IMG/VR virus record: IMGVR_UViG_3300024308_000302
Span: 1 to 64,000 of that record
Length of the DNA: 64,000 bases
Direction: 5' to 3' (one strand)
The position numbers and the translations under genes were made by a program. Shown here piece by piece: positions 1,733-59,482 of the stretch. The notes under the pieces are model-generated. The model worked only from the letters and a program-made list of their open reading frames with translations. It was not told where the DNA came from and made no database searches. The stretch's first letter is position 1. Every line of letters begins with the position of its first letter.

Positions 1733-1770
1733 TCTCGTTTTGATGGGATAAGTATAGCAAAAATGAGTTT
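1733..1770 (-). promoter_or_regulatory. sigma70 promoter followed by the conserved start motif CATCAAAACGAGA
   Basis: TTGACC-17-TATACT then the motif; motif recurs at about 15 promoters. Confidence 0.8.
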
Positions 1771-1850
1771 TTTGGTCAAGACTTTATTTTAACTATAAAA
1801 AAAGGGAGCCTAAGCCCCCTATCTAATTGCAAGTGATGATTTAACCAGGT

Positions 1851-2135
1851 TTAAAGGTCATGTGGGTATTTTTTCACAAACTCAGCCCAAAGCTCTTTAT
1901 CGACCTTGTAGGTGCTGGAAAGGCCACCTTCCGGTTTAATGCCATCATAGTGGTTGACCAAGAGGTAACGAGTTTCATCTTTCAGATAATTGCCTTTGCG
2001 GTCACCAGAGAAGCGAGCATTTCGAGTAATCTCAAGAAAAGCGTTGCTTCGAATACGGTCTTCAATACGGAAGTATTCACGCCGAGTGATAACTTGAAGG
2101 TTATCTTGATTAAATTCAGTAATGAGTTCAGACAT
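1851..2135 (-). CDS. hypothetical protein (KVDxELW family)
   Basis: ORF between promoter and terminator; KVDKELWAEF C-terminus. Confidence 0.75.
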   Translation of the reverse strand: MSELITEFNQDNLQVITRREYFRIEDRIRSNAFLEITRNARFSGDRKGNYLKDETRYLLVNHYDGIKPEGGLSSTYKVDKELWAEFVKKYPHDL

Positions 2136-2233
2136 AATAGAATCCTTGAAATAGTTGAATATCTGGAAGCAATTCTAACAAAAATCAATTCAAAAATAAA
2201 GTTATAAAAGAAGATTAATGGTAAAAATAGTTA

Positions 2234-2500
2234 TTAACCGCAGCCGCAAGGGCAAGTCCAGATAGTCAATCCATGAGGACAAAAACCATTACTTTCGTTT
2301 TCATCGTCCATGTCAGAAATTTCATCAGGAGAAAGATATCCATATTTTTCACGGGCATATTCAAAAGCTTCTGGAACAACTTTTGGATCAAAGTGTTCAT
2401 CCATAAGAGAAGAGAAGCCTTTGATCAACATGAATTCGTAAGTAGTGTATTGTTTACAGGCTTGGTTGAATAGGTCATCAACAACAAAATGGAATGACAT
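2234..2500 (-). CDS. hypothetical protein with Cys/His-rich C-terminus
   Basis: CPHG...CPCGCG putative metal-binding tail. Confidence 0.75.
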   Translation of the reverse strand: MSFHFVVDDLFNQACKQYTTYEFMLIKGFSSLMDEHFDPKVVPEAFEYAREKYGYLSPDEISDMDDENESNGFCPHGLTIWTCPCGCG

Positions 2501-2597
2501 AAAAGAGATCCTTAAAGAAGAATAGAGAAATTATAGCAATAAAGTATATAAAAAACAACAAAAAAGGGGCCGAAGCCCCTGAGACAAGATTTAAGTA

Positions 2598-2873
2598 TTA
2601 AGCAGCAATTTGCTCGATAGTCGAAGAACGCATCAGTTTGGTGGTCTGGATTTTACCAGAGCGGGTAAGAGAGACAGTGTTACCGAAAAGGTCTTTGGTA
2701 CGCTCAAGCAGACCTTTACCAATCATGTTGTTGACAACAGCACCAACTTGGTTGGATTTGATTTTGGAAGGGCCAGTGGAAAGGAAGTTCTGAGGAATGA
2801 CTTGACCTACACCGTAGTTCTGAATATTTTTCAAAACAGCTTGTTCGAGAGCGGTGATGATGAGTTTAGCCAT
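2598..2873 (-). CDS. winged-helix (MarR-like) protein, paralog 2
   Basis: near-duplicate of 1447-1713, including promoter and leader. Confidence 0.6.
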   Translation of the reverse strand: MAKLIITALEQAVLKNIQNYGVGQVIPQNFLSTGPSKIKSNQVGAVVNNMIGKGLLERTKDLFGNTVSLTRSGKIQTTKLMRSSTIEQIAA

Positions 2874-2998
2874 TTCGAGAGTCCTTATGTTATCTCGTTT
2901 TGATGGGATAAGTATAACAAAAATGAGTTTTTTGGTCAACAACTTTATCAAGAAAAACAAAAAAGCCTCGGGAAAGAGGCTTTAAAATGGATAGTTCT

Positions 2999-3439
2999 TT
3001 AATCTTTTAATGTGATAACAGGGCCTAAAGATACATCAACACGGCCAGCACCCTGAGTCACTTCCTGATAGCGAGAGTTGCCCAGTTCACGAAGTTCTTT
3101 CCAGTAGGGTTCCCAAGGTCCAGTAATCAGGATAGTTCTACATCCACCACTTTTGGTAATACGGTGATATTCGTTTTTAGGGATATAGATGATTCTGCTA
3201 CGATTGCGATCAAGAGCAACAACTTTGCCATCTTGGATAACTTCTTCGATATAATTACCAGAAATCAAAAAACTGAGGGCACCAAAGGAATGTGTATGGA
3301 ATCGATCTTGCTTTCCATCTGTTTTGTGAAAGTTGAATATTTTAATACTAAAGAGTTTTTTCCATTCAAGTACAGTTATTTCTGAAACATTTTGATCGCC
3401 TAACTGAATAGATTTCTTTTTCCAAAATATAATAGACAT
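2999..3439 (-). CDS. cupin-fold protein
   Basis: FHTH...GNYIEE...HRI cupin metal motifs. Confidence 0.65.
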   Translation of the reverse strand: MSIIFWKKKSIQLGDQNVSEITVLEWKKLFSIKIFNFHKTDGKQDRFHTHSFGALSFLISGNYIEEVIQDGKVVALDRNRSRIIYIPKNEYHRITKSGGCRTILITGPWEPYWKELRELGNSRYQEVTQGAGRVDVSLGPVITLKD

Positions 3440-3471
3440 AAAGAAACTCCAAGTATAATGTAATGATTTAC

Positions 3472-3888
3472 TTACTTTAAAGAACCATAAAGAGAAGCAA
3501 TACGAGAATGATGTTGCTCAGAAACATTTAAAGTAAGTTGAATATAACCAGATAAGAAAGAAGTATCATCGTCATCATCTGGTTCAGAAACCTGTTTACT
3601 GCAAACAGAAACATTAGGGTCTAGAGTAAAACCATATGACTCGAACATTCGAATTACACCAGTTTCTGAAATACCCATAACATCTCTAAAAGCATTACCA
3701 CTTGGCCACCACCAAATAATATCAGTAACAATGGAGCCAGAAATAACATCTAATGCTTTTTGAGACGCCTTAGAATCAGTTGGATCTCTTGTTTGGTCAA
3801 TAACAGCAATAGAGCCATCATTTAATAAAAGACCAATTTTTGGAAGAAGATTTTTCTTAGTAGAGTATAAAAATGTCAAAGTAGTCAT
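3472..3888 (-). CDS. hypothetical protein
   Basis: ORF with SD and promoter. Confidence 0.75.
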   Translation of the reverse strand: MTTLTFLYSTKKNLLPKIGLLLNDGSIAVIDQTRDPTDSKASQKALDVISGSIVTDIIWWWPSGNAFRDVMGISETGVIRMFESYGFTLDPNVSVCSKQVSEPDDDDDTSFLSGYIQLTLNVSEQHHSRIASLYGSLK

Positions 3889-3993
3889 AGATATTTATCC
3901 TTTAGAGTAATATATGAAAATTATTATAACAAAAAAAACAATATAAAAACAATAAAAAAAAGACCTATGAATAGGTCTTAAATACTCTAAATA

Positions 3994-4440
3994 TCAGCAA
4001 GAATCGCCCTGTGGGCCATCAGGGTGACTGGAGTAGACATAACCTTTAGCCAAACCTTGATTAGTAATTTCAGCAAAATAAGCATCAGCTTCATCAAAAT
4101 CCATATCGTCCATTTCATCTTGCGAAGGAACTGGTTTACCTAACAGAGACATAAAGAACTGATTAAAAATCTGTTTTTGAATAAAGGAAATGAGACATGC
4201 AGAGTAAATTACATCAGGAGCTTTTCCCAAGGAGTAAAGTTCAGGATTATTGAAATCAACCAACAAAATATTATTATTGTTTGGAACAAACAAACCAGAA
4301 AGAGCACCATCATTGACGGCATCAAGAAGTGCAGGATTTTCAGAAAGAACATCAATCATTTGAGATTGAGTAAGAAAGAAATTAGTATCACCACTGATCA
4401 ATTTGCAAACTTTGGTGATTTCATTCTGATTAATGTTCAT
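3994..4440 (-). CDS. hypothetical protein, paralog of 19392-19706
   Basis: start at MNINQ (AAGGA SD); shared Q.Q.I..L...P.LL..V..G and LG.P.PS..E.DDMD motifs. Confidence 0.75.
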   Translation of the reverse strand: MNINQNEITKVCKLISGDTNFFLTQSQMIDVLSENPALLDAVNDGALSGLFVPNNNNILLVDFNNPELYSLGKAPDVIYSACLISFIQKQIFNQFFMSLLGKPVPSQDEMDDMDFDEADAYFAEITNQGLAKGYVYSSHPDGPQGDSC

Positions 4441-4530
4441 AAAATATCCTTTTGGTTGATGAGGCAATTATACACTAAACGATTAGAAAAGAAAAGAAAA
4501 AGGGGCCAACAAGGCCCCTAATGGTAAAAA

Positions 4531-4920
4531 TTACTGCCAAAGCTGATGGAAAGCTACCAGCCATGTTTTTAAATTTTCAATTTCAACATCGACTTTATCA
4601 AGAGCATATTGTGGTGCATTTAGCTGACGAAGATGTTCTTTATCACTCAACAGGTTTGCTTTTGCTGCATGATAAGCATAAGACAAAGTGTTAAGTTGCT
4701 CAGAAGTAGGTTTGTGACCAGCATTAGGATGCTCAACAGAAAGACAATAATTAGAGAGCAAACCTTTAAAAGATTCTTCAAGCTGAATATTCTTCTGAAT
4801 CCACTGGGGGTCTTTTACTCCAATAAAATGAACAATACTGGAGTGGTTAGCATTTACTTGGTGATGAAGGGTAGATTGAAGTTCTAACAGTTTTTTATAA
4901 TGATTCATGGCTATATCCAC
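4531..4920 (-). CDS. hypothetical protein
   Basis: ORF in cassette. Confidence 0.7.
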   Translation of the reverse strand: MDIAMNHYKKLLELQSTLHHQVNANHSSIVHFIGVKDPQWIQKNIQLEESFKGLLSNYCLSVEHPNAGHKPTSEQLNTLSYAYHAAKANLLSDKEHLRQLNAPQYALDKVDVEIENLKTWLVAFHQLWQ

Positions 4921-5061
4921 CTAATTAAGAAGAGATTTGAATACTGGCAAGTGTAGTCGCCAAGTTTTGATGGGATTATAATACCAAAAATTAGATTTAT
5001 AAGCAAGCAAAATCATTGAAAATAAAAAAGCCTCCGAAGAGGCTTTAACAAATCAGTGATT

Positions 5062-5544
5062 TTAGTTAAAAATTTTGTTGATTACTTCGTCATAGCGATT
5101 TTTTACTGCAGTAGCCGCTGCTGCATAATAGTGTACATTTCCCCGGCTTTTTTCGAGTTCAACCATTAAATCAGACATGGAAATGTTTTGAGTTGGAACT
5201 TTGGATAAATATCGATTTTCAAGTGCTTGCATAGAGTTGTTGAGAGCTTTATCAAGACTGGCCAAAATAACATCACGGTCACGAACGGGGTGAAGAATGA
5301 AGTTAGGATTAAGACCAATGCAAACACCACTCTCCTGTTCGTAAATATCATCTTTCTCAACTTGACTGGCTGAGTGAACATCAGAAATATTGATATTAGG
5401 ACGAATACTGAAATGTTGAGAATCAGCTTGCAAGACAACACCAGTCACCGAATTCAAGAATATTGCATGATGATTGGGGTGATCCCAAAGTTCGATATTA
5501 CGAAGGTTTACGATTTTATCACCGATATTGAACTGATGAGACAT
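5062..5544 (-). CDS. hypothetical protein, paralog of 15825-16328
   Basis: shared N-terminus F/Y-N-I/V-GDK-I/V-x-x-L-x-N-x-x-LWD. Confidence 0.75.
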   Translation of the reverse strand: MSHQFNIGDKIVNLRNIELWDHPNHHAIFLNSVTGVVLQADSQHFSIRPNINISDVHSASQVEKDDIYEQESGVCIGLNPNFILHPVRDRDVILASLDKALNNSMQALENRYLSKVPTQNISMSDLMVELEKSRGNVHYYAAAATAVKNRYDEVINKIFN

Positions 5545-5638
5545 TATGAAGCTCCGTTAAAAGATGACTTATTATAATACTAAATCAAAAAATATACAAC
5601 AAAAAAAGAGGCCGAAGCCTCTCTTTTATAAAAAATAT

Positions 5639-5914
5639 TTAAGCCAAAACAACTTTTTTGAATTCATGATTTACATGCATAAGCCCCTCAAGGCACTCTT
5701 GAGAAATTTTATGAGTGATACAAAGAGCTTCAATTTCAGAATCAATTTCATTTTGAACCTTAATGAAATCTTCTGCTGGAACATGTTCTGTGGATTCAAA
5801 AAGGGTATCGAATGCCTGAATAGATTCTACCAGTGGAGCACTTGAGATGTTATAAAAGAATTGAAGTGCTTTAGCTTCGTTAACAAGGCTTTCTTGGCGG
5901 TCTTGAATATTCAT
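5639..5914 (-). CDS. hypothetical acidic protein
   Basis: ORF in cassette with GGAG SD. Confidence 0.75.
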   Translation of the reverse strand: MNIQDRQESLVNEAKALQFFYNISSAPLVESIQAFDTLFESTEHVPAEDFIKVQNEIDSEIEALCITHKISQECLEGLMHVNHEFKKVVLA

Positions 5915-5997
5915 CGAAACACTCCTTTATTAAGTGATGGCATTATAACACTGAATAAAGAGAGATACAAGAAAAAGGGGCCGAAGCCCCAAAATAT

Positions 5998-12434: not shown

Positions 12435-13052
12435 TTAGTGAGAGCAAGATGGGTTATGGAGCAAGCCTTGTTTCCAGTGTTTACGGCATACCGAAACATA
12501 GCTGGTTTCAGCACCTACAACCACCTCGGCACCATCACGAAGGATTTCACCAGTTTCAGCATTGAAGCGGGCATTCATTGTAGCTTTAACACCACACCAG
12601 CAAATGTGTGGGAGGGCTTCAATTTTGTCTGCAATTTCAATGAGACGTTTCGAGCCGGGGAACAGTTCACCTTTAAAGTTAGTGCGAAGGCCGTAGCAAT
12701 CAACACCAATATTCAAGAAATCGACAACATCCGAGAGTTGTTCAATTTGCTCTGGAGTGTAGAACTGTACTTCGTCGCAGTAGATATGGGCGATAACTTC
12801 GCCAGCTTCTACTTTGGCCTTGATGATTTCAAAAATGTTAACACTATCGTTTACGGAGATACTTGGAGCTTTAACCCCAAGGCGAGATGCGATTACACCT
12901 TCACCAAAACGAGTGTCTACAGAGTGGGAGAACAGAACAGTGTGCTGACCACGTTTAACGTAGTTATCGTTAGCAATGAGCAGACTCAAGCTCTTACCCG
13001 AGTTCATCACTGCATGGTTAAAAGTGAGTTTGATTTCTACCGACATTGCCAT
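12435..13052 (-). CDS. tdk: thymidine kinase (TK1 family), copy 1
   Basis: MNSGKS P-loop, CDEVQF, YGLRTNF, CWCG...CRKH zinc site. Confidence 0.95.
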   Translation of the reverse strand: MAMSVEIKLTFNHAVMNSGKSLSLLIANDNYVKRGQHTVLFSHSVDTRFGEGVIASRLGVKAPSISVNDSVNIFEIIKAKVEAGEVIAHIYCDEVQFYTPEQIEQLSDVVDFLNIGVDCYGLRTNFKGELFPGSKRLIEIADKIEALPHICWCGVKATMNARFNAETGEILRDGAEVVVGAETSYVSVCRKHWKQGLLHNPSCSH

Positions 13053-13119
13053 ATACCCTTGTTCGTTTCGATGGGATGATTATACCAAAACCAACAAGGG
13101 GGATCAAGAAAAATAAGGA

Positions 13120-15559: not shown

Positions 15560-15757
15560 TTATGCTGCTTTCAGAATTTCTTTTTTGCTTGCTTTATGTT
15601 GAGCAACCAGCACCTGAGCAGGGTATTCACGGATACCGTTATCAACCATAACTTCAATAAGAACAGAAGCTGGGGTGATGCCGCGATCAAGAGCCAGAAC
15701 GTCTTGAACCAGTTTGAATTGAGCGTCGGTCAGGTGCAGAGTGTGTTGAGTGTGCAT
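15560..15757 (-). CDS. small hypothetical protein
   Basis: start at MHTQHT (AAGGA SD); carries the leader motif. Confidence 0.7.
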   Translation of the reverse strand: MHTQHTLHLTDAQFKLVQDVLALDRGITPASVLIEVMVDNGIREYPAQVLVAQHKASKKEILKAA

Positions 15758-15824
15758 TCTGGAATTCCTTGCTGTCGTTTTGATGGGGTAATTATAGCAA
15801 ATACTCCAACCATAATCAAGTTTT

Positions 15825-17965: not shown

Positions 17966-18430
17966 TTAAGCCAGAACTTGAACTGGCAGGCCAGTCGATT
18001 CGATGTGCTCCACAGGAAGGTCAACTTCGGAGTCAGCTTTAACAGCTTCTTCCATAGCTACTACTGCTTTCCCAATGCGTTTGGCAGCTTTGCGGATAGC
18101 GACCAGTTGAGCAACCAGTGCTTGTTCTTCTTCCGAAACTGGAGCCTGACGGCTGAGTTCTACGTTGCTTGCCATGCGAAGGTTTTCAAGATATTGTTCT
18201 TCGGTTGGAAACAGTTCATTGTGAACAGCAATGCCAGCAGCAGTCAGCGAGACATTATCACCATCACGGGTGACCAGACCTTTACCTTTCAGATTCAGAA
18301 TAACAGCACTCACTTGAGTAGCTTTGATTTCTTGTGGACCTTCGTGAACGCTTTTAACCGAAACGTTTTCTACACCAGCGACTGCAACGTTGGCGATAAC
18401 AGCGATTTCGAGAGCGGTTACTTTAGTCAT
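17966..18430 (-). CDS. winged-helix protein, paralog 3, with C-terminal extension
   Basis: TALE...IKATQVSAVILNLKGKGLV...VSLTAAG aligns with 1447 and 2598. Confidence 0.6.
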   Translation of the reverse strand: MTKVTALEIAVIANVAVAGVENVSVKSVHEGPQEIKATQVSAVILNLKGKGLVTRDGDNVSLTAAGIAVHNELFPTEEQYLENLRMASNVELSRQAPVSEEEQALVAQLVAIRKAAKRIGKAVVAMEEAVKADSEVDLPVEHIESTGLPVQVLA

Positions 18431-18568
18431 TTTGAATCTCCAATTTGTTTGATTTGGTGTATCTCGTCTTGATGTGGCTATTCTAGCAAAAACAATATTA
18501 GTGGTCAACCACTTTTTTCGCCAAAAACAAGTTTTTTTGAAAATAAGAAAGGGGCCGAAGCCCCAAAA

Positions 18569-20073: not shown

Positions 20074-20208
20074 TTATTCCGAATCTTGGTGACGATTGCG
20101 GCGTTTATCTCGCCATTTACGGTCGTTTTTACGAGCTTTGATTTGCTCGGAATCTTTCACTTTACGACCACTGAAACGTTCTACCATATCACCATGAGAG
20201 CCTTGCAT
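20074..20208 (-). CDS. 44-aa basic peptide, MQGS...RDKRRNRH family
   Basis: GGAG SD; three paralogs in the window. Confidence 0.8.
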   Translation of the reverse strand: MQGSHGDMVERFSGRKVKDSEQIKARKNDRKWRDKRRNRHQDSE

Positions 20209-20365
20209 TTTGTATCTCCTAACCTTTTTGATTTGATTGTGTTGTTTCGTCTTGATGGAATAATTATATAGAAAACACACCATCATGTAAAGCATTTTTT
20301 TGTAGTATTTTTGATATTTTTCAAAAAAAGAGAGGCCGAAGCCTCTTTTTGTAAGAACGAATTGA

Positions 20366-21777: not shown

Positions 21778-22371
21778 TTAAACTGGTTTTTGAATTTGGC
21801 CAAGTTTCCAATGCTTGCGGCAAACAGAAATGTATTTACCTTCTGCACCAACTTCAACATCACCACCATCACGGATAACTTCGCCAGTGGCAGAATTGTA
21901 TTTCAAGTTCATGGTTGCATCACAGCCACACCAGCAAACTTGTGGAAGTTGTTCGATTTTGTCAGCGAGTTCCATCAAACGTTTGGATGCCTCGAAAAGT
22001 TCACCTTTGAAGGTGCTGCGAAGGCCATAAGCAATTACAGGGATATTGAAAGAGTCTACGATTTCAGAGAGTTGTTCGATTTGCTCAACCGAATAAAACT
22101 GTACTTCATCGCAGAAAACACAAGCAATATCGTCGCCATTTGCTACTTTAGCGGCAATGATTTCAAGCAGGTTAACAGATTCATTAACCGAAATGCTTGG
22201 AGCTTGAAGGCCAAGACGGGAAGCAATCACGCCCTCACCAAAACGGGTATCAAGCGAGTGAGAGAACAGCACAGTGCCACGGCCTTTTTTTACATAGTTG
22301 TCATTTGCAACGAGAAGGCTAAGGCTCTTGCCTGCGTTCATTACTGCGTGACGGAAGTAAAGTTTGCTCAT
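21778..22371 (-). CDS. tdk: thymidine kinase (TK1 family), copy 2
   Basis: MNAGKS, CDEVQF, YGLRSTF, CWCG...CRKH. Confidence 0.95.
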   Translation of the reverse strand: MSKLYFRHAVMNAGKSLSLLVANDNYVKKGRGTVLFSHSLDTRFGEGVIASRLGLQAPSISVNESVNLLEIIAAKVANGDDIACVFCDEVQFYSVEQIEQLSEIVDSFNIPVIAYGLRSTFKGELFEASKRLMELADKIEQLPQVCWCGCDATMNLKYNSATGEVIRDGGDVEVGAEGKYISVCRKHWKLGQIQKPV

Positions 22372-22564
22372 TGGTCTGTACCATTAACGTTTCGATGGAG
22401 TGATTATACTGTATTTATGGTGTGATGTAAACAAAAAAGCCTCAAAAGAGGCTAAAAATAATATTTATTTTCAAGCTTTCCAATGGTTGGAATCTTCCCA
22501 ATTTTCATTGTTACAACCAAGAAAAGCCATTGAAAACATCAGAATACAATAAACCATAGAAACC

Positions 22565-25218: not shown

Positions 25219-25620
25219 TTAGATGATCCTGCTACTGTTAACGAAGAAGCCAGTAAAGTGAAGTTCTCGGATTTTATCCTGAAAATCCTGAACAAGAGCA
25301 GCATTGTCACTGCCCATTTGAGTGAACCAAACCAGAGATTTTTCGTGCTCAACAATCATTTCATTGAGAGCTTTATTAACCCAAGAAAGCTCAAATACAC
25401 TCAAAGAGATTTCCATGGTAGGGTCCATTTCAACCTGACTGAAGTAGGATACCAGATTGTCCATGCGGTCAACCACCATACCATGCTCTTGAATCAGATG
25501 CTCAACATTAGAAGTCTTTGCAACAGACTTCAAGCGGACAAGGTAAGTGTTCAGGTTGTGAACAGCAGAAACCAAAGCATTAACAACGTTGGTGGCATGC
25601 TGAGCTACGGTGTATTCCAT
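25219..25620 (-). CDS. hypothetical helical protein
   Basis: start at MEYTVA; carries the leader motif. Confidence 0.7.
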   Translation of the reverse strand: MEYTVAQHATNVVNALVSAVHNLNTYLVRLKSVAKTSNVEHLIQEHGMVVDRMDNLVSYFSQVEMDPTMEISLSVFELSWVNKALNEMIVEHEKSLVWFTQMGSDNAALVQDFQDKIRELHFTGFFVNSSRII

Positions 25621-25776
25621 GATGAGATTCCTTGTATTGTCTCGTTTTGATGAGCAAAGTATAGCAAAATCAATATTTATGGTCAACTTATTTTTTTTCC
25701 ATATTTTGAAAAAATGAGTAGTAAAAATAAGCTTTTTAAGTTATAATGCTTTCACATCATAAAGAGGTGTTTTACA

Positions 25777-32848: not shown

Positions 32849-33160
32849 TTATTCAGAAACTGTAACGTATACCTTGAAGCCCCAGCAACTATCAGGGAGA
32901 AGGAAACCCGGAGAACAACCGCAAGAGCAACCTGCTTTTTGTGACCACGATACTTTTGTATCTGCTGGAAGTCCTGCCTTTTCAAGAATTTGAGGGATTA
33001 CCTCTTTTTTGTAAGCAGTGCTTGGACGATGACGACGATTTGCAAGATTCTGAAGAACAGTTTCACCTTCTGGGAAAATGAAGATCTTGCTGCGTTCAGA
33101 GCGAGCACGACGACCTCTGGTAGAACTGTTTGGGAGTATTTGAAATTTGGTAATTTGCAT
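32849..33160 (-). CDS. hypothetical basic protein
   Basis: start at MQITKF; WSQKAGCSCGCSPGF motif. Confidence 0.75.
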   Translation of the reverse strand: MQITKFQILPNSSTRGRRARSERSKIFIFPEGETVLQNLANRRHRPSTAYKKEVIPQILEKAGLPADTKVSWSQKAGCSCGCSPGFLLPDSCWGFKVYVTVSE

Positions 33161-33228
33161 TTTACACCTCACATTTCGTTTCAATGTCGCTATTTTACTA
33201 CAAATTAAACGACATTGTAAACATATTT

Positions 33229-34166: not shown

Positions 34167-34251
34167 TGGTGCCCGGAGCCGGACTCGAACCGGCACGGCT
34201 TTCGCCGGAAGATTTTAAGTCTTCTGTGTCTACCAATTTCACCATCCGGGC
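34167..34251 (-). tRNA. tRNA-Leu: tRNA-Leu(TAA), copy 1
   Basis: cloverleaf with long variable arm and CCA. Confidence 0.95.
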
Positions 34252-34394
34252 TTTTTAGTCTACTCTCGTCTTGATGTGGTAATTATATAGAAATCCACAT
34301 GGTAGGTCAAGCATATTTTTTAGAAAAAACCATTAATTTTCAATAATTTAAAAACAACAAAACCGCCAGATGGCGGTTCATGGATTAGAAAATT

Positions 34395-35399: not shown

Positions 35400-35477
35400 G
35401 GGTGCTCTTGGTAAGGATTTGAACCTACGACTTGTGGGTTTCCGCCCACAAACTCTACCAGACTGAGTTACAAGAGC
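35400..35477 (-). pseudogene. aberrant tRNA-like element (8-nt anticodon loop GCGGAAAC, bulged T stem, ends ACCC)
   Basis: 7-bp acceptor stem GCTCTTG/CAAGAGC, D arm and TTCAAAT loop intact. Confidence 0.65.
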
Positions 35478-35484: not shown

Positions 35485-35610
35485 TTATTCTGCGTGACGG
35501 TTGCGGCGTTTATCACGCATTTGACGACTGATTTTGTTATCACTACGTTTGGCGTTATCTTTCGATTTGCCCGAGAATTTTTCCATAGTGTCGCGGTAAG
35601 AACCTTGCAT
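35485..35610 (-). CDS. 41-aa basic peptide, MQGS...RDKRRNRH family
   Basis: not in the ORF track; AAGGA SD; translated by hand. Confidence 0.8.
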   Translation of the reverse strand: MQGSYRDTMEKFSGKSKDNAKRSDNKISRQMRDKRRNRHAE

Positions 35611-35718
35611 TTGGTGTTTCCTTGTATGCTTCGTTTTGATGGGATAAGTATATCAACCATTGAACCCGTTAGCAACCATTTTTTTGAATATTTTTCGCTA
35701 TTTTTTCAAAAATTTAGG

Positions 35719-36706: not shown

Positions 36707-36835
36707 TTAAGCGTCTTGATGACGATTGCGGCGTTTATCACGGAATTGACGGTCTTTTTTTGCAAAATTGCGGGTTTCTTTGTCACGACCTTTAGAAGTG
36801 AATTTTTCGGTCATATCGTTGTGAGAACCTTGCAT
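36707..36835 (-). CDS. 42-aa basic peptide, MQGS...RDKRRNRH family
   Basis: AAGGA SD; leader motif; co-transcribed with tRNAs. Confidence 0.8.
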   Translation of the reverse strand: MQGSHNDMTEKFTSKGRDKETRNFAKKDRQFRDKRRNRHQDA

Positions 36836-36994
36836 TTCGTATTTCCTTGTATGTTTCGTTTTGATGGGTTCATTATAGAGAAATTGGTACTGCATGTAAA
36901 GCATTATTTTCAAATTTTCTTAAAAAAACACATGATATTTTTCTTGTATTTCACTGATTTTTAAAGAAAAAGAAAAGGGCCTTTCGGCCCTTAG

Positions 36995-39840: not shown

Positions 39841-39924
39841 TGGTGCGGAAAGCGGGACTCGAACCCGCACGCCTTGCGACACTGGCTTCTAAGACCAGCA
39901 CGTCTACCATTTCGTCACTTCCGC
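39841..39924 (-). tRNA. tRNA-Leu: tRNA-Leu(TAG)
   Basis: cloverleaf with long variable arm and CCA. Confidence 0.95.
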
Positions 39925-40045: not shown

Positions 40046-40142
40046 TTGCTGCAAGATTTTGTATCTCCGTTTCGTCTTGTGGGCCTATTATAGTGTAATG
40101 CAAGGTAACCGTCAAGCTTTTTTACTTCTTTTAGAACAAATT

Positions 40143-51520: not shown

Positions 51521-51531
51521 GACAATAAACC

Positions 51532-54395: not shown

Positions 54396-54740
54396 TTATT
54401 CGATGCCAGTCCAAGGCAATGTTTTACCTTCAAGTTCAAACACACTACCACGCGATTTGTTACGTGCAGGTGCTTTCCAACCTGCAGCTTTCAGTAGTGT
54501 GCCATAAGGAAATTCTTTGTCATTATGGCAGTTAACAACAAAGCCATTTACACTACGGCTACCACGATTTTCTACCACAACTTTGATGTATTTTTTACCA
54601 AAATCAAATTCAATTTCATAATCACCATTGAAACCATTTTTGGTATAGTCAGCCTTCATGAGTTCAGCAACTTTATTCAAGCCAAGATGCATATCTTCTT
54701 CACTGTGTACAATGATGTTTTGGATAGCTGCAGTAGTCAT
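54396..54740 (-). CDS. conserved phage protein (KYIK...SV.GF...LKAA.W.APARN), tandem copy 1
   Basis: motif shared with the adjacent copy. Confidence 0.8.
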   Translation of the reverse strand: MTTAAIQNIIVHSEEDMHLGLNKVAELMKADYTKNGFNGDYEIEFDFGKKYIKVVVENRGSRSVNGFVVNCHNDKEFPYGTLLKAAGWKAPARNKSRGSVFELEGKTLPWTGIE

Positions 54741-54880
54741 TTGCGTATCATCCTATGTTTTCGTCTTGATGAGTATATTATATAGAAGAACCAATAGATC
54801 ATCAACAACTATTTTTAAGTTTTTTCAAACAGAATAAACAAAAAAGGAGCCGAAGCCCCTTTCATGTTGTTCCAAATCCC

Positions 54881-55225
54881 TTACAGGATGCCAGTCCAAG
54901 CTACTTTCTTGTCTGCGATTTCGAAGATGTTGCCACGGACATTGTTTCGTGCTGGTGCAGCCCAAGAAGCAGCTTTCAGCAGAGTCCCATAAGGGAATTT
55001 CTTATCGTTATGAACGTTGACGATGAACCCACCAACACTGCTACTACCACACCAACGTTTAACGATTTTGATATATTTGCTGCCAAATTCGAATTCAATG
55101 GCATAATCCGAAGTGCTGCCACCTTTGTAGAAGTCTTTCGTCATCATGTCGGCCAAAGCTTGAAGGCAAGGCTGCATGGTTTCTGCATTGCGTTCAACTT
55201 GGGTAGCAACGGTGGTGTTAGTCAT
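54881..55225 (-). CDS. conserved phage protein, tandem copy 2
   Basis: paralog of 54396; shared terminator and leader type. Confidence 0.8.
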   Translation of the reverse strand: MTNTTVATQVERNAETMQPCLQALADMMTKDFYKGGSTSDYAIEFEFGSKYIKIVKRWCGSSSVGGFIVNVHNDKKFPYGTLLKAASWAAPARNNVRGNIFEIADKKVAWTGIL

Positions 55226-55324
55226 TTCGATTCATCCTGTGTCGTTGTCTTGATGTGGTTATTATAGGGAATTTCGCCTAGCCATGCAAGCTTTATTTTT
55301 AAGTTTTTTCAAAGAAAAACAGTT

Positions 55325-55555
55325 TTAATTTTTGTCATTTTCCTGTTTAATTAGATGGATCTTGCTAGTGATGAGATCCATGTCTTTATTTACATCTTTT
55401 ATCATTTCAATAGATTTTGACATATCACTATTTGCTTCTCGAAGCAACCTAATCATACGGTCAAAAGAAGATTCTTCCACCAGAGTAGATTTTTTAGGAG
55501 CAATGCCAAAAACTTTTTTAAGGCCGACAACAAATAGTTTAAATGAAAAAGTCAT
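55325..55555 (-). CDS. small coiled-coil protein
   Basis: start at MTFSFK (GAGG SD). Confidence 0.65.
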   Translation of the reverse strand: MTFSFKLFVVGLKKVFGIAPKKSTLVEESSFDRMIRLLREANSDMSKSIEMIKDVNKDMDLITSKIHLIKQENDKN

Positions 55556-55632
55556 AATGACCTCTGCAAAAAGATGATTTATTATAACATATGTAAAAAA
55601 AGAGAGCAATAAAAAACCACCCGAAGGTGGTC

Positions 55633-55887
55633 TTATTTGTTGCTAACAGAAAAAGTTGTGGACGCGACTTCTTGGTTATCAACATCTAGAGAAATTCGAT
55701 ATCCAACATAGTCATAGTCATAATAGTCTTCTGAACCTAAAGAAAATGAAACATCTTCTTTCAGAATACTCACAACAGAATTACGAACATCAACATCTTC
55801 TCGCATTAATTCAACAAGAATTTCTGCAAGTAAAGCTTTTGCATCAGAACTGCTTTGAATTGCTTGTAAAAGTTCAATAGGGGTCAT
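55633..55887 (-). CDS. small acidic protein
   Basis: start at MTPIEL (GAGGA SD). Confidence 0.7.
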   Translation of the reverse strand: MTPIELLQAIQSSSDAKALLAEILVELMREDVDVRNSVVSILKEDVSFSLGSEDYYDYDYVGYRISLDVDNQEVASTTFSVSNK

Positions 55888-56004
55888 AATTTTATCCTCA
55901 TAGGGCTGTCTAAACGATAGCTTGTGGATATATGTCCTCTGAACAGGTTGTAGTATAACAAAACAGAAGAAACAATGCAATAAAAAAACCGCCGAAGCGA
56001 TTTT

Positions 56005-56766
56005 TTATTTTACCCAAATTTCGATATTGTGTTTATCACCAGCAATACCTGTACCAGAATAGCCAGGATTTGTATTACCTGCACCCCAACCATGAGTGAC
56101 AGAAGCTCCAATATATTGAGTTGCAATATATAAGCTGGATGGTAGAGTAAAATCAGAAAGTCCAGCAACATCTGAATGTGGTTGTCCTTGTCTATAACCT
56201 GCAGATAAAGTTTCATTTGAATAACTTGTCAAACAAATACCAGTCGCTTGTACATTACTGCTATATGAGCATTCTCCTGAAAAATAACGAGTCCCTGCAT
56301 AACGACCATAAGCTATTGTCTTATAGGTATTTTTAGGAATGGAGTTAATGACAGCATCTGGCAATTTGTAAGTTACAGAACTTGCTGGATTAGAGGCTAT
56401 ACCTGCTGGATTACTCCAATTTGCAGTAGACATTTGAATACCACGACCAACCAGAGTCCATCCACCATTAGACATATCACAGTAAACTGAGATATCAGAA
56501 CCATTATATTTTATAGTTTGAATACCATTAGTAAGTGATGGGTCTTTTGACAAAAGTCCTTTACAAGATGAAGACGTTAAATCTTCTTCTGGTTCCTCTG
56601 GGATTACAGGTTCCTCTGGTTCTTTAACTGGTGGAGTTTCACCATTATAAAAATGAATATCAGGGACACCAATAATGACTTGATAAGTTTTTGTATCTGC
56701 GGCTAAAGATATAAAAGGTGTCAATACAATTACTGGGATTATAAGTTTGAATTTATTAAGGCTCAT
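56005..56766 (-). CDS. exported protein with a fibrinogen-like C-terminal domain
   Basis: signal peptide, YQVIIG, Pro/Glu linker, SC...VYCDM..GGWTLV fibrinogen signature. Confidence 0.8.
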   Translation of the reverse strand: MSLNKFKLIIPVIVLTPFISLAADTKTYQVIIGVPDIHFYNGETPPVKEPEEPVIPEEPEEDLTSSSCKGLLSKDPSLTNGIQTIKYNGSDISVYCDMSNGGWTLVGRGIQMSTANWSNPAGIASNPASSVTYKLPDAVINSIPKNTYKTIAYGRYAGTRYFSGECSYSSNVQATGICLTSYSNETLSAGYRQGQPHSDVAGLSDFTLPSSLYIATQYIGASVTHGWGAGNTNPGYSGTGIAGDKHNIEIWVK

Positions 56767-56877
56767 ATAAAATTTATTATTATTATTTCACACATTATAA
56801 TATAGGCCACAATTAAGTCAATAACAAAAAAGCCACTCGAAAGTGGCTTTAATTGCATTATTGAAAATATTTAGATT

Positions 56878-57066
56878 TTAAACATCTTCATAAACAGGTT
56901 TAATTCCATGGCTTTTGAATTCTGCTTCAAGTTCTTCTTGAGTCATATTGGCAAAACCTTTAAATCCATGGTAAGCAACTGAATACTGCTCACTACTGTC
57001 ACTTGCAAGCAGACTCATTTCGCTGTCAAGGAGTGCTTTGATGGATGCTTGAGTAATCTTTTTCAT
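56878..57066 (-). CDS. small hypothetical protein
   Basis: ORF in cassette. Confidence 0.7.
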   Translation of the reverse strand: MKKITQASIKALLDSEMSLLASDSSEQYSVAYHGFKGFANMTQEELEAEFKSHGIKPVYEDV

Positions 57067-57143
57067 GGAGTTTATCTCGCTCTATTTAAGATGTGCTAAT
57101 TATAACAAAAATCATCAACAAAAACAATAATTATTGTTGTATA

Positions 57144-57431
57144 TCAGTCTTCAAGAACATGAAAAGTGTATTTTTTAGTCAAGGCATCGAATTTATCTTT
57201 GAGATATTGTTTCATTTCATCCAAAGTATCAGTTTCGTGAGTCAAAAAAATCCATGTCCAGTCAGATTCTGTCTTTACAGTGAAAGCTGATTTCCACTTG
57301 TGCTGGCGATAGTTTGGTGCGGAAATCAAGCCTACAACTTCTTTTTTATATTTAATATCAACATCTGGCCAAGGATTACCAACCGAAGCCAACCCAGTTT
57401 CTTTTTTATGATTTTTAAATGTAAAAGACAT
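57144..57431 (-). CDS. hypothetical phage protein
   Basis: ORF in cassette. Confidence 0.75.
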   Translation of the reverse strand: MSFTFKNHKKETGLASVGNPWPDVDIKYKKEVVGLISAPNYRQHKWKSAFTVKTESDWTWIFLTHETDTLDEMKQYLKDKFDALTKKYTFHVLED

Positions 57432-57528
57432 ATTCCATCACCTTTAATTTGATAATGTTTTGATTATAACAAAGAACAGAAATTAAAGCAATAAAAAACC
57501 ACCCGAAGGTGGTTTAAAAAACTGCTTT

Positions 57529-58119
57529 TTAAAGGGCTGGGACAAGCCCTTTTGCAATGGCCATAGAAACCCCAAGAATCGTGTTACAAGCTCGAATTTC
57601 ACCAGAAGCAATCATTTCCATGGTTTTCTTACGAGAAATTTTGACAACCTGAATATCTTCGTCATCAATACCATGTGATTCTTCATAGTTGAAACGAGAC
57701 GAATCAACTTTTGCAAAATAGTGAATGTGCATTTCAGTCAGACAACCGGGAGTGGTATAACCTTTGCAAATAAACTGAATACTTGCAGGGTCAATTTTCA
57801 CGTTGGTTTCTTCTTCACCTTCACGATGTGCAGTGAATGCAGGATCTTCGTTAGGGTCAATATGACCAGCAACAGGTTCGATCAGCCAAGGATTTGTTTC
57901 AGTTTTGTGCATTGCTGGGCCGGTGCGGAATTGACGAACAAAAATGAATTCATCAGTCTTTTCATCAAAAAGAGTAAGGCAAATAGCATCTTGCTTGCTA
58001 ACAATGTAGTGCTCAAGCTTTTTTTCACCACCATTAATAGTGTCATGAGTAGCATGCACCAAAGCAAGCGACATGAAAGAGCGTTTAAATTCATATTCAA
58101 TTTCATCAATTTTGTACAT
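57529..58119 (-). CDS. Nudix hydrolase, ADP-ribose pyrophosphatase-like
   Basis: Nudix box GHIDPNEDPAFTAHREGEEETN; VRQFR, Y.TPG..TE, DEDI. Confidence 0.9.
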   Translation of the reverse strand: MYKIDEIEYEFKRSFMSLALVHATHDTINGGEKKLEHYIVSKQDAICLTLFDEKTDEFIFVRQFRTGPAMHKTETNPWLIEPVAGHIDPNEDPAFTAHREGEEETNVKIDPASIQFICKGYTTPGCLTEMHIHYFAKVDSSRFNYEESHGIDDEDIQVVKISRKKTMEMIASGEIRACNTILGVSMAIAKGLVPAL

Positions 58120-58213
58120 AACATTTCCTTTTGATTTAACGTTTACTTGCAATCATGATAGCAAATAAGCCATCAAATCGCAAGTTTTAATAGTGTATAA
58201 GCCCCAAAATCTA

Positions 58214-58672
58214 TCAGGTAGCAATCTTAGGCTCAGCATTTTTGTTTACAGCATGCCATTTTTGCTTTTTTTGTTGTCTTTTTGAAATATAGATTTCTGG
58301 ATTTTTAATCATTTCACCCAGTTTTTCAAGTGTGATAATCCTGTTTCCTTTGAGATTGTTGCAAACCTGACACATAGGTTGATAGTTTGCCAATTCATTA
58401 CGACCACCACGACTTTTAGGGTGAATATGGTCAACAGTCATAAGAATCATATCAGCAGTAAATACATCCCAATGGATTCCACCTTGTGAATCAATGGAGC
58501 GAACTACCTTTTCACCAATATTTGTACAGCCGGGAGTGACGCAAGCACAACCCTTGTGGAAAAACACTTGCAGGCGGCAATGATCTTTAAAACCTTCCAA
58601 ACGAGTAACAGGATATTCTTGATCGAAAAAAGCACCAAAACGTGGGATTTTTTGACCTTTAACAAGTTTCAT
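58214..58672 (-). CDS. HNH endonuclease-domain protein
   Basis: TVDHIHPKSRGG.N...N...MC..CN..KG. Confidence 0.9.
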   Translation of the reverse strand: MKLVKGQKIPRFGAFFDQEYPVTRLEGFKDHCRLQVFFHKGCACVTPGCTNIGEKVVRSIDSQGGIHWDVFTADMILMTVDHIHPKSRGGRNELANYQPMCQVCNNLKGNRIITLEKLGEMIKNPEIYISKRQQKKQKWHAVNKNAEPKIAT

Positions 58673-58741
58673 TGTTCGAATCCTTCTTTTTTTGATTTCT
58701 GTTTTTAGTGTAACATAAGTATATTTTTAGATCAACAAAAA

Positions 58742-58759
58742 AGCCACCCGAAGGTGGCT
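58742..58759 (-). terminator. terminator closing the minigene-array transcript
   Basis: GAGCCACC-TTCG-GGTGGC-TT plus U-tract. Confidence 0.85.
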
Positions 58760-58973
58760 CTTTATCTGAATTCTTCACAAGGCGGCATGATAAATGTGCC
58801 ATTTAATGAAAACCTTGCTCCAATCGCACCACTCTTTATATATATGAGATCTGCAAGATGCGATTCACTTCACTCATATCCACAACAGCTAAGTTCAGTT
58901 AAGGGGGCCTGTCGTGGTCAGCCATCACCTTAAATACATCATCATAATTAATCAAATATAAAATAATTAGAAG

Positions 58974-59417
58974 TTAGTTCTGCATCGGCGGTTCACCTCC
59001 CGGCACCCAATTAATTAGTAGGGGTTAATCGGCAATCTTAATCAAATTAATAGTTTCAAAATTATATAAGTTAGTCAACTTACTGCATCGGTAGCTCACC
59101 TCTGGCACTCAATTAAGTAGTGTGGAAGTCAAATTTGTTTCTAAGATTAATCAATAATAGGTTATCAAATTAACTTAGTACGGCATTGCTAGCTCACCTC
59201 CGGGCACTTCATTAAGAGTATCAATCGGTTTATAAAAAAGGTATTGCAATCAAATATTCTAAATTAATCAAGTCTATAATTTAAGTTCAATGCTGCATGG
59301 GTAGCTCACCTCGGGCACTTGCATTAATGTGTTCGGTTTAGGCTATTCTAACAAATTAATCAATAAAATAAAAGTTTTAATTTACTGAGTTTTACATTTT
59401 TAGCTCACCTCTGCACT
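58974..59417 (-). repeat. array of five approximately 100-nt units, each a strong-SD minigene (M*, MQH*, MPY*, MQ*, MQN*)
   Basis: core (A/G)GTGC(C)N0-2GAGGTGA-N7-ATG; ATG-to-ATG periods of 99, 112, 98 and 103 nt. Confidence 0.85.
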
Positions 59418-59435
59418 TTCTTTATTCTTTCTGTT

Positions 59436-59482
59436 TCTCGTCTTGATGTGGCTATAATATCAAAGAGTCACAAACCTGTAAA
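59436..59482 (-). promoter_or_regulatory. sigma70 promoter of the array, with the CATCAAGACGAGA start motif
   Basis: TTTACA-17-TATTAT with TGn extension. Confidence 0.8.

What the first reader, a model, noticed from the sequence alone, without database searches (positions are those of the whole stretch)
1733..59448. Conserved +1 motif CATC(A/G)A(A/G)ACGA(G/A)A defines a putative regulon
Seen in sequence: this motif lies immediately after the -10 box at 1733-1745, 2893-2905, 15775-15785, 18462-18474, 20245-20257, 25640-25652, 34264-34276, 35629-35641, 36854-36866, 40070-40081, 54759-54771 and 59436-59448, with variants at 13062, 22388 and 55245. These units include all three wHTH genes, all three MQGS peptides, tRNA operons, both tdk genes and the minigene array. 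Most other promoters lack it; some instead have CATCTTAAAT. Inference: an operator (possibly for the wHTH proteins, autoregulated), an initially transcribed sequence that favours promoter escape for immediate-early genes, or a 5' RNA tag.
Basis: partly seen in the sequence, partly recalled or inferred. Interest (0 to 1): 0.62.

Follow-up and report, generated by a model that had tools for sequence, protein, structure and literature searches.

The report
Shared start block of strong early promoters
The 13-base motif is real and marks the first transcribed bases of a distinct class of very strong host-polymerase promoters; the same block sits at the same place in the early-promoter cassettes of several T4-type phages, so it is a known kind of element in a new, unrelated giant phage-like genome.

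Summary
CATCRARACGARA occurs 9 times exactly in the window (0.02 expected). The 11-base core occurs 16 times in the 290-kb record. Fifteen of these lie on the minus strand exactly 5 nt after a sigma-70 -10 box. With variants there are 16 sites in the window and about 20 in the genome.

These promoters form a discrete class. They carry an A-tract UP element, a TTGAC-type -35, a 17-nt spacer and often TGn. They fall into about 15 non-paralogous families, so duplication does not explain the motif.

The class is enriched in the first 60 kb and upstream of tRNA genes.

The block is not private to this genome. The same sequence at the same offset occurs in the early "PeSL" promoter cassettes of coliphage RB49, Vibrio phages KVP40 and nt-1, Aeromonas phage Aeh1 and uncultured T4-type phages. 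T4, T5 and pVp-1 have none, and host chromosomes nearly none. This genome is not T4-type.

The 88-aa proteins do fold as winged helix domains. They are missing from the other block-bearing phages, and the block has no dyad symmetry.

Best reading: the block is the start site plus initially transcribed sequence of escape-limited, near-consensus early promoters. What reads its exact sequence remains open.

The parts
1733..1745 (-). Block CATCAAAACGAGA behind TTGACC-17-TATACT; drives an 88-aa winged-helix-like protein (1447-1713).
2893..2905 (-). Block CATCAAAACGAGA; tandem paralogue of the 1733 unit; drives a 91-aa protein (2598-2873).
13061..13073 (-). Variant CATCGAAACGAAC behind TTGATC-17-TATAAT; drives thymidine kinase (12435-13052).
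15773..15785 (-). Variant CATCAAAACGACA behind TTGATT-17-TATAAT; drives a 65-aa ORF (15560-15757).
18462..18474 (-). Block CATCAAGACGAGA behind TTGACC-17-TAGAAT (TGn); drives a 154-aa protein whose N-terminus is related to the 88-aa protein (17966-18430).
20245..20257 (-). Block CATCAAGACGAAA behind TTTACA-17-TATAAT; drives a 44-aa MQGS peptide (20074-20208).
22385..22397 (-). Variant CATCGAAACGTTA behind a terminator plus TTTACA-17-TATAAT; drives the second thymidine kinase (21778-22371).
25640..25652 (-). Block CATCAAAACGAGA behind TTGACC-17-TATACT; drives a 133-aa ORF (25219-25620).
33174..33186 (-). Variant CATTGAAACGAAA behind TTTACA-18-TAAAAT; drives a 103-aa ORF (32849-33160).
34264..34276 (-). 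Block CATCAAGACGAGA behind TTGACC-17-TATAAT; runs straight into tRNA-Leu(UAA) at 34167-34251 with no ORF.
35629..35641 (-). Variant CATCAAAACGAAG; drives a 41-aa MQGS peptide (35485-35610), followed by four tRNA genes (35477-34929).
36854..36866 (-). Block CATCAAAACGAAA behind TTTACA-17-TATAAT; drives a 42-aa MQGS peptide (36707-36835), followed by tRNA-Arg and tRNA-Leu (36697-36530).
40070..40082 (-). Degenerate copy CCACAAGACGAAA behind TTGACG-17-TATAAT; upstream of tRNA-Leu(UAG) at 39841-39924; paralogue of the site at 181569.
54759..54771 (-). Block CATCAAGACGAAA behind TTGATG-17-TATAAT; drives a 114-aa DUF7717 protein (54396-54740).
55243..55255 (-). Variant CATCAAGACAACG, with one extra A, behind TTGCAT-17-TATAAT; drives a 114-aa ORF (54881-55225). 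The same variant is seen in RB49.
59436..59448 (-). Block CATCAAGACGAGA behind TTTACA-17-TATTAT; drives a non-coding unit holding five SD-ATG-stop minigenes (about 58990-59400).

Best explanation
The block is the transcription start (C-1 A+1 T+2) plus the first dozen transcribed bases of one discrete class of host sigma-70 promoters. The full architecture is: A-tract UP element, TTGAC(A/C) or TTTACA, a 17-nt spacer (often with TGn), TATAAT-like box, 5 nt, then CATCRARACGARA(YAC). By sequence it is the same start block found in the early 'PeSL' promoter cassettes of a subset of T4-type phages. Proposed mechanism (inferred, not shown): promoters this close to consensus hold RNA polymerase so tightly that escape becomes rate-limiting. 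A T-poor, purine-rich initial sequence with a fixed CAT start then raises productive initiation. This would give very high, immediate expression of small take-over proteins and of the element's own tRNAs. What the block is, I hold with about 0.8 confidence. That its sequence acts through start-site choice and escape, I hold with about 0.45. The figure given below is for the two together.
For: Position: all 17 sites with at most one mismatch among the high-scoring minus-strand promoters lie exactly 5 nt after the -10 hexamer, and 16 of 17 have a 17-nt spacer. The mismatch distribution is bimodal, so the class is discrete. Exact copies away from promoters (1 in this genome, 1-4 in the others) are roughly at chance level, about 0.16 per strand here.
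Selection on the block itself: among 15 non-paralogous promoters the block carries 17.4 bits, against 6.1 for the -35 and 6.3 for the -10. The spacer carries 0.33 bit per position and +14..+40 carries 0.25.
Association with strong-promoter features: A-tract upstream (Mann-Whitney p = 5e-5). A terminator T-run abuts the -35 in 2 of 20 class promoters against 65 of 186 others.
Stable-RNA use: 8 of 20 class promoters lie within 300 nt upstream of a tRNA gene, against 7 of 186 others (p = 8e-6). This argues against a purely translational or mRNA-stability role.
Leader composition: A 50% and U 14-17%, against U 36% in other leaders. In E. coli polymerase assays T-rich starts slow escape, GA near +6 favours it, and purine content correlates with productive yield (PMC5961368). 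T5 N25, an escape-limited promoter, is strongly modulated by its initial transcribed sequence (PMC12464699).
Cross-phage evidence: the same block at the same offset occurs in RB49 (19), KVP40 (22), nt-1 (21), Aeh1 (18) and the uncultured T4-type records G001, G002 and G005, with 0 control matches in these records. RB49/phi1 PeSLs are described as early promoters; the one wild-type clone recovered, PeSL206/205, gave about 13,000 Miller units, and nearly all other clones carried -35 or -10 mutations (PMC2839356).
Against: General escape rules ask only for T-poor, purine-rich starts. They do not explain why C+3, C+8 and G+9 are nearly invariant across phages whose proteins are only 30-40% identical. 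That degree of conservation points to a sequence-specific reader that I could not identify. T4 and T5 have very strong early promoters without the block, so it is not required for strength in E. coli. CG at +5/+6 was unfavourable for escape in two promoter contexts (PMC5961368). The census that defines 'other promoters' rests on hexamer matching, which at low stringency is not above chance.
Confidence: 0.5

Rival explanations
1. The block is a 5' RNA tag. The conserved 5' end AUCRARACGARA is read after transcription by a host or phage factor, for stability, processing, translation, or to tell phage transcripts from host transcripts.
For: The conservation is strand-specific and tied to the transcript's 5' end. 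The sequence is far more exact than escape rules require. The first 12 nt are predicted mostly unpaired, 0.80 against 0.69. The block is rare in host chromosomes: 11 hits in 201 Vibrionaceae genomes, about half of them at one conserved alcohol-dehydrogenase (adhC-like) promoter. So it could distinguish phage RNA. In Moraxellaceae prophage-like loci the same block forms the 5' arm of a terminal hairpin.
Against: 8 of 20 units begin tRNA operons, and one begins a non-coding minigene unit. tRNA 5' leaders are normally removed by RNase P, by established knowledge. No hairpin partner exists in this genome. No protein is shared by all block-bearing phages: DUF7230 also occurs in block-less phages and is absent from RB49. 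There is no Rfam match in the window apart from the tRNAs.
Confidence: 0.2
2. The block is a homology patch of mobile promoter cassettes. It is conserved because PeSL-type cassettes spread and are homogenised by recombination within and between phages, and its exact sequence has little function of its own.
For: In RB49, mini-circle crossovers were mapped between the -10 box and the ATG or SD, which is the segment holding the block (PMC2839356). The distribution is patchy and follows neither host nor lineage: RB49 has it and T4 does not; Aeh1 has 18 while 44RR and phage 65 have only 2 weak matches each; and it occurs in this non-T4-type genome. Uncultured contigs carry arrays of small genes with the whole promoter and leader repeated. 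Even the CATCAAGACAACG variant is shared with RB49.
Against: In this genome the flanks of non-paralogous copies are unrelated, with median identity 0.33 outside the blocks, while the 13 nt are kept. That is the signature of purifying selection, not of recent copying. Thirteen bases are short for homologous exchange. This rival also does not explain the link with UP elements and tRNA genes.
Confidence: 0.15
3. The block is an operator at +1 to +13 for a phage repressor, either the small winged-helix proteins acting on themselves or another factor. The repressor would shut off the early class after take-over.
For: All three winged-helix-like genes carry the block. The 88-aa protein models as a MarR-like DNA-binding domain, with pLDDT 79 and TM 0.7-0.77 to MarR-family structures. 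A site at +1 to +13 would block polymerase. How T4 early promoters are shut off is still not understood (PMC2988021, PMC3014915).
Against: The block has no dyad symmetry (4 of 13 self-complementary positions) and no inverted copy within -60..+70, whereas MarR-type proteins bind dyads as dimers. The proteins have no homologue in KVP40, in G001, G002 or G005, or in a 348-kb record, although KVP40, G001, G002 and G005 carry the same block; the own-genome control found all three copies. They also have no relatives in viral contigs. Only 3 of about 20 units encode such proteins.
Confidence: 0.1

Closest known systems
PeSL (promoter-early stem-loop) cassettes of T4-type phages: RB49/phi1, KVP40/nt-1 (PMC2839356, PMC4122927)
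   Same: Both have a sigma-70-type early promoter with an AT-rich upstream region and a short leader ending in an SD and start codon, in front of small orphan genes, with terminators nearby. The same 11-13-nt block lies exactly 5 nt after the -10 box, including the YAC(AC) extension and the CATCAAGACAACG variant.
   Different: This genome is not T4-type: only 5 ORFs match KVP40, RB49 or Aeh1, against 44-57 for uncultured T4-type records. Here the stem-loop is usually separated from the -35 by an A-tract instead of overlapping the promoter. Many units drive tRNAs. The spacer and leader are not conserved between copies. The two PeSL papers name the -35, -10, stem-loop and SD; a term search of PMC2839356 and a reading of two of the three parts of PMC4122927 found no mention of the start block.
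T5 N25-type early promoters with a functional downstream or initially transcribed region (Kammerer 1986 as cited in PMC5961368; PMC12464699)
   Same: Both are near-consensus phage early promoters with an A-rich upstream region. From my own knowledge, N25 also starts at CAT 5 nt after the -10 box. In N25 the transcribed region changes output more than 10-fold through promoter escape.
   Different: T5 itself has no copy of this block. The N25 start region has a different sequence. No single conserved initial-sequence motif has been defined for escape (PMC5961368).
T4 early 'uber' promoters: UP/-35/TGn/-10 (PMC2988021)
   Same: Both stack several polymerase recognition elements to out-compete host promoters, and both show extra blocks of consensus of unknown role.
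   Different: T4 uses GTTTAC-type -35 boxes and has no copy of the block.
MarR-family repressor operators
   Same: A small winged-helix protein is encoded directly behind three of the sites.
   Different: There is no dyad symmetry and only a single copy per promoter. The block also occurs in phages without the protein.

Membership tests
PeSL early-promoter cassettes (T4-type phages) | Sigma-70-like -35 and -10 boxes with an AT-rich region upstream | tested here: met
   TTGAC(C/A) or TTTACA, 17-nt spacer, TATAAT-like box and an A-tract upstream; A count 7.7 against 4.5 in other promoters, p = 5e-5
PeSL early-promoter cassettes (T4-type phages) | Stem-loop (terminator or attenuator) within or next to the promoter | tested here: inconclusive
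   A terminator-like hairpin lies within 90 nt upstream in 8 of 20 class promoters, no more than at other promoters (53 of 186). [quoted passage not shown]
PeSL early-promoter cassettes (T4-type phages) | SD and start codon of a small orphan gene at the 3' end | tested here: met
   Leaders of mostly 21-49 nt (tdk-2 about 25) run to an AAGGA-type SD and ATG for 11 units. This feature is not met for the tRNA and minigene units
PeSL early-promoter cassettes (T4-type phages) | Resides in hyperplastic regions of a T4-type genome | tested here: not met
   Only 5 ORFs match KVP40, RB49 or Aeh1, and none is a T4 core structural or replication gene
PeSL early-promoter cassettes (T4-type phages) | Sequence identity of the start block with bona fide PeSLs | tested here: met
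   CATC(G/A)A(A/G)ACGA(A/G)A lies 5 nt after the -10 box in RB49 (19), KVP40 (22), nt-1 (21) and Aeh1 (18)
PeSL early-promoter cassettes (T4-type phages) | Mediates cassette excision or insertion (mini-circles) | not testable with these tools
   Needs inverse PCR on infected cells or comparison with a close relative; no close relative was found
Escape-limited strong promoters modulated by the initial transcribed sequence (T5 N25 type) | Near-consensus core elements plus a T-poor, purine-rich start | tested here: met
   See the promoter census; leader U is 14-17% against 36%
Escape-limited strong promoters modulated by the initial transcribed sequence (T5 N25 type) | Changing the initial sequence changes the abortive-to-productive ratio and output | not testable with these tools
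   Needs in vitro transcription and reporter assays
Repressor operator (MarR/wHTH type) | Dyad-symmetric or repeated half-sites | tested here: not met
   4 of 13 self-complementary positions; no inverted copy within -60..+70 of any site
Repressor operator (MarR/wHTH type) | Cognate DNA-binding protein co-occurs with the site | tested here: not met
   The protein is absent from KVP40, G001, G002 and G005, which carry the block; the own-genome control was positive
Sigma-70-dependent promoter-proximal pause element (lambda PR' type) | A -10-like hexamer in the initially transcribed region | tested here: not met
   The block holds no TAnnnT hexamer. Class leaders are if anything depleted of such hexamers, 8 of 20 against 118 of 186

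The most novel reading that the evidence does not exclude
The block is a portable, sequence-specific identity tag of early promoters, and it crosses phage families: T4-type phages of E. coli, Vibrio and Aeromonas, plus this unrelated 290-kb genome. Under this reading it is read by a conserved, still unknown factor. Candidates are a specific contact of the bacterial polymerase with the downstream bubble and duplex, or a host protein or RNA. The tag would allow early transcription to be boosted, or shut off as a class. This would bear on the unsolved question of how early promoters are switched off in T4-type infections.
Probability: 0.2. Interest if true: 0.7.

Novelty: new member of a known kind. 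Interest (0 to 1): 0.4.

Why it matters
The block gives a simple sequence signature, a -10 box plus 5 nt plus CATCRARACGA, that picks out one promoter class in an otherwise unannotatable giant phage-like genome. That class covers the likely take-over genes and the element's own tRNA operons.

The comparison also shows that the start region of PeSL-type early promoters is their most conserved part. It is shared between phages of different hosts and even different families. The two PeSL papers name only the -35, -10, stem-loop and SD. If the exact sequence matters to the polymerase or to a host factor, it is a ready-made natural test case for how the first transcribed bases control strong promoters. 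It would also be a useful part for strong, portable expression cassettes in gamma-proteobacteria.

Tried and rejected
- Close relatives: megablast and blastn of window pieces, and tblastn of a 412-aa ORF, against phages and plasmids gave nothing apart from tRNA-sized matches. Only tblastn of the 356-aa ORF gave one weak hit, to Vibrio phage D479. D479 and D69 do not carry the block in number.
- Relatives of the 88-aa protein in viral contigs: none.
- Literature search for the literal sequence: only primer coincidences. The KVP40 and RB49 genome papers (PMC180978, PMC135041) are not held.
- Host promoter mimicry: rejected. A scan of bacterial genome contigs gave scattered single hits close to the chance number. 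201 Vibrionaceae genomes gave 11 hits, about half of them at one adhC-like promoter.
- Alternative genetic code to explain the short ORFs: no stop-codon reassignment clearly lengthens ORFs, so no other code is named.
- A shared phage-encoded reader: ORF sets of this genome against six block-bearing phages share only Tk, RNA ligase 1, a phosphoesterase, an HNH endonuclease and a 41-aa DUF7230 protein.
- Pairing of the block with 16S rRNA, an IHF site and a DnaA box: considered from memory only. Partial resemblances are no better than chance and were not pursued.

Full report
**Setting**

The window is the first 64 kb of a 290,157-bp virus record (IMG/VR class 'provirus', CheckV 96%). Its GC falls from about 36% to 27-30% along the record. 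Almost all genes lie on the minus strand. They are separated by intrinsic terminators, 36 found against 9.9 expected in 15 kb, many with a UUCG tetraloop. The record has 35 tRNA genes.

**The observation**

CATCRARACGARA occurs 9 times exactly in the window, always on the minus strand, against 0.02 expected. In the whole record the core CATC[AG]A[AG]ACGA occurs 16 times, against about 0.16 expected per strand. Fifteen of the 16 lie directly behind a sigma-70-type promoter on the minus strand.

Outside the window there are copies at 115.1, 126.8, 169.6 and 181.6 kb and a TATCGAAACGG variant at 257.4 kb.

**A discrete promoter class**

I scanned the genome for TTGACA-like and TATAAT-like hexamers with a 16-18-nt spacer and kept the high-scoring sites. 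This gave 206 sites on the minus strand and 86 on the plus strand.

- The number of mismatches to the block just after the -10 box is bimodal: 14 sites have 0, three have 1, three have 2, and the bulk have 4-7.
- Every site with at most one mismatch has the block exactly 5 nt after the -10 hexamer, and 16 of 17 have a 17-nt spacer. This puts the A of CAT 7 nt after the -10 box. From established knowledge of E. coli promoters, that is the usual start position and the usual pyrimidine-purine start context.
- The class has an A-tract where UP elements lie (p = 5e-5), mostly TTGACC, TTGACA or TTTACA as the -35, and often TGn.
- Other promoters commonly have the terminator T-run abutting the -35: 65 of 186, against 2 of 20 in the class.

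One caution applies. Low-stringency hexamer matches are not above chance in this AT-rich DNA, so the 'other promoters' set surely holds false positives.

**Not a by-product of duplication**

Outside the -35, -10 and block, only three groups of sites resemble each other: 1733/2893, 35629/36854/169633 and 40070/181569. The median pairwise identity of all other pairs is 0.33. In 15 non-paralogous promoters the 13-nt block carries 17.4 bits, more than the -35 (6.1) and -10 (6.3) together. The spacer has 0.33 bit per position and +14..+40 has 0.25. The sites were chosen by the block, so its own value is inflated. The contrast with the flanks is still what matters.

**What the class drives**

The class drives:
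- three paralogous small proteins of 88, 91 and 154 aa;
- four MQGS basic peptides, three of them followed at once by tRNA genes;
- both thymidine kinases;
- a DUF7717 protein and several orphan ORFs;
- a unit of five minigenes;
- tRNA genes directly.

Eight of 20 class promoters lie within 300 nt upstream of a tRNA gene, against 7 of 186 others (p = 8e-6). Fourteen of 20 lie in the first 60 kb, against 39 of 186 others (p = 1.4e-5). Class leaders are A-rich (50%) and U-poor (14-17% against 36%), and this extends beyond the block. They are also slightly less structured.

**The block is shared with other phages**

A scan of 2.9 million viral contigs for TAWAAT-N5-CATCAARACGA gave 102 loci. About half have no -35 and look like chance. 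Those with a proper -35 mostly continue with GA or AA, although the pattern did not ask for it. Several contigs carry many copies.

Whole-record searches showed the same block at the same 5-nt offset in these records, with 0 control matches in these records:

| Record | Host | Copies |
|---|---|---|
| Vibrio phage KVP40 | Vibrio | about 22 |
| Vibrio phage nt-1 | Vibrio | 21 |
| Aeromonas phage Aeh1 | Aeromonas | 18 |
| Coliphage RB49 | E. coli | 19 |
| Uncultured records G001, G002, G005 | unknown | 4-9 each |

G001, G002 and G005 are T4-type by gene content. T4, T5, the T5-like Vibrio phage pVp-1 and Acinetobacter phage 133 have none. 44RR, phage 65, ICP1 and D479 have two weak matches each, and D69 has none.

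In RB49 the consensus is GTTGTTGACA, 17 nt, (C/T)ATAAT, ACACC, CATCGAAACGA(A/G)A(C/T)ACAC, then AGGAGAATCAAAATG. These are the PeSL cassettes of Arbiol et al. (PMC2839356) and Comeau et al. (PMC4122927), which are composite terminator, early promoter and SD elements flanking orphan genes. One cloned wild-type PeSL gave about 13,000 Miller units, and most other clones acquired promoter-down mutations. Mini-circle crossovers were mapped between the -10 box and the ATG.

The two papers name the -35, -10, stem-loop and SD. A term search of PMC2839356 and a reading of two of the three parts of PMC4122927 found no mention of the start block.

**This genome is not T4-type**

Only five of its ORFs match KVP40, RB49 or Aeh1: two Tk, RNA ligase 1, a calcineurin-like phosphoesterase and one other. 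As a control, KVP40 and RB49 share 89. The block therefore crosses phage families.

It does not follow the host. It is present in RB49 but absent from T4, and present in Aeh1 while 44RR and phage 65 have only two weak matches each.

It is not a general host promoter feature either. 201 Vibrionaceae genomes gave 11 hits, about half of them at one conserved alcohol-dehydrogenase promoter. The scan of bacterial contigs gave scattered single hits near the chance number.

**The operator idea**

The 88-aa protein models as a winged helix-turn-helix domain (pLDDT 79). Its best structural matches are MarR-family repressors, with TM 0.7-0.77.

Three things speak against the block being their operator. 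It has no dyad symmetry and no inverted partner. The protein has no homologue in the other block-bearing phages, although the own-genome control found all three copies. It also has no relatives in viral contigs. The operator reading is unlikely, though not excluded for this genome alone.

**Search for a shared reader**

A comparison of all ORFs with six block-bearing phages found only Tk, RNA ligase 1, the phosphoesterase, an HNH endonuclease and a 41-aa DUF7230 protein. DUF7230 is also in block-less phages and is missing from RB49. No phage-encoded candidate remains.

**Mechanism**

Three things are shown:
- the block belongs to the core promoter at a fixed distance from the -10 box;
- it goes with the strongest promoter architecture and with stable-RNA operons;
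- the same block belongs to RB49 PeSL cassettes, described as early promoters, one of which was shown by reporter fusion to be very strong.

The rest is inferred. Near-consensus promoters are limited by escape, as T5 N25 is (PMC12464699). T-rich starts slow escape, GA near +6 and high purine content favour it (PMC5961368). A T-poor, purine-rich start with a fixed CAT would therefore raise productive initiation.

The weak point is specificity. These rules do not explain near-invariant C+3, C+8 and G+9 across distant phages. Something reads the exact sequence. It could be the polymerase itself in the open or initially transcribing complex, whose downstream bubble and duplex contacts cover about -1 to +12, or a host factor, or the RNA 5' end. 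Alternatively, the block persists partly because cassettes move and recombine through it.

I give 0.5 to the start-and-escape reading, 0.2 to a 5' RNA tag, 0.15 to a mobile-cassette homology patch and 0.1 to an operator.

**Verdict**

The finding is real and well described. The element is a new member, in a new genomic background, of a known kind: PeSL-type strong early promoters. The added observation that the start block is their most conserved and most widely shared part gives it moderate interest.

Noticed in passing
window 58990-59400 (- strand): Five repeats, each with a strong SD (GAGGTGA), an ATG, 0-3 codons and a stop (M*, MQH*, MPY*, MQ*, MQN*). They are spaced about 60-110 nt apart and sit behind the class promoter at 59436. 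This is a minigene array, reminiscent of lambda bar minigenes that provoke peptidyl-tRNA drop-off.
   Followed up: partly
window 20074-20208, 35485-35610, 36707-36835; G000 169486-169614: Four paralogous 41-44-aa basic peptides start with MQGS and end in RDKRRNRH. Each has a good SD, and three are followed within about 10 nt by tRNA genes in the same unit. They have no Pfam or PHROG family.
   Followed up: partly
G000 179840-179914 and 180849-180923; window 35401-35477; G000 163041-163117: Two tRNAs have the anticodon CUA, which would read the amber stop codon. Two tRNA-like genes have irregular anticodon loops. There are about ten copies of tRNA-Leu(UAA) among the 35 tRNAs. Treating TAG as sense did not clearly lengthen ORFs.
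   Followed up: partly
window 14519, 24685, 42003, 44297, 47301, 54263; G000 67354, 69182, 98067 (-10 box positions, - strand): A second start-site block, CATCTTAAA(Y) or CACTTAAAC, follows the -10 box of about 9 other promoters. These have weaker -35 boxes (TTGCCA, TTGTCC and others) and no A-tract. CAT at the start position is general: 62 of 206 minus-strand sites.
   Followed up: partly
G000 whole record: The record is odd for a 290-kb virus. Its largest ORF is 633 aa. The 8-10 largest ORFs mostly have no Pfam or PHROG family. No hallmark structural gene turned up among the ORFs scanned, only one weak 'virion structural protein' hit. It carries cellular-type genes: PepA aminopeptidase, a Na+/H+ exchanger, a PilV/shufflon-like pilin, a transposase and HNH endonucleases. 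Its lineage and host remain unknown.
   Followed up: partly
G000 whole record, - strand: The most over-represented 9-mers are terminator stems with a UUCG tetraloop, such as GGGGCTTCGGCCCC, up to about 300-fold over expectation.
   Followed up: no
L219 (Moraxella MAG), L235 and L216 (Psychrobacter), L074, L095: Prophage-like loci carry AATAATGCTTGC... -35 boxes, TATAAT, then CATCAAGACGAGA followed 6-9 nt later by CTTGAT. There the block is the 5' arm of a terminal hairpin.
   Followed up: no
L254-L259 (Vibrionaceae chromosomes): One conserved host promoter, upstream of a class III alcohol / S-(hydroxymethyl)glutathione dehydrogenase-like gene, carries TATAAT, 5 nt, then CATCAAGACGACA in at least six species.
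   Followed up: no
G000 156851-156976 (L327:352-477, - strand): A 41-aa basic DUF7230 protein (motif NFVAKHMNTFNK) is conserved in KVP40, T4, pVp-1 and many other phages. Its function is unknown.
   Followed up: yes
window 12435-13052 and 21778-22371: The two thymidine kinase genes are 43-46% identical to those of RB49 and Aeh1. They are among the very few genes shared with T4-type phages, and each has a CATCGAAACG-type start block like those phages.
   Followed up: partly
L119, L181, L196, L213 (Patescibacteria and other MAGs): In these loci the block after a -10 box is followed by a conserved GGGG...CCCC structured segment (AAGGGGCCCGAACGGTTAAC...). It may be an unrelated structured leader RNA.
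   Followed up: no
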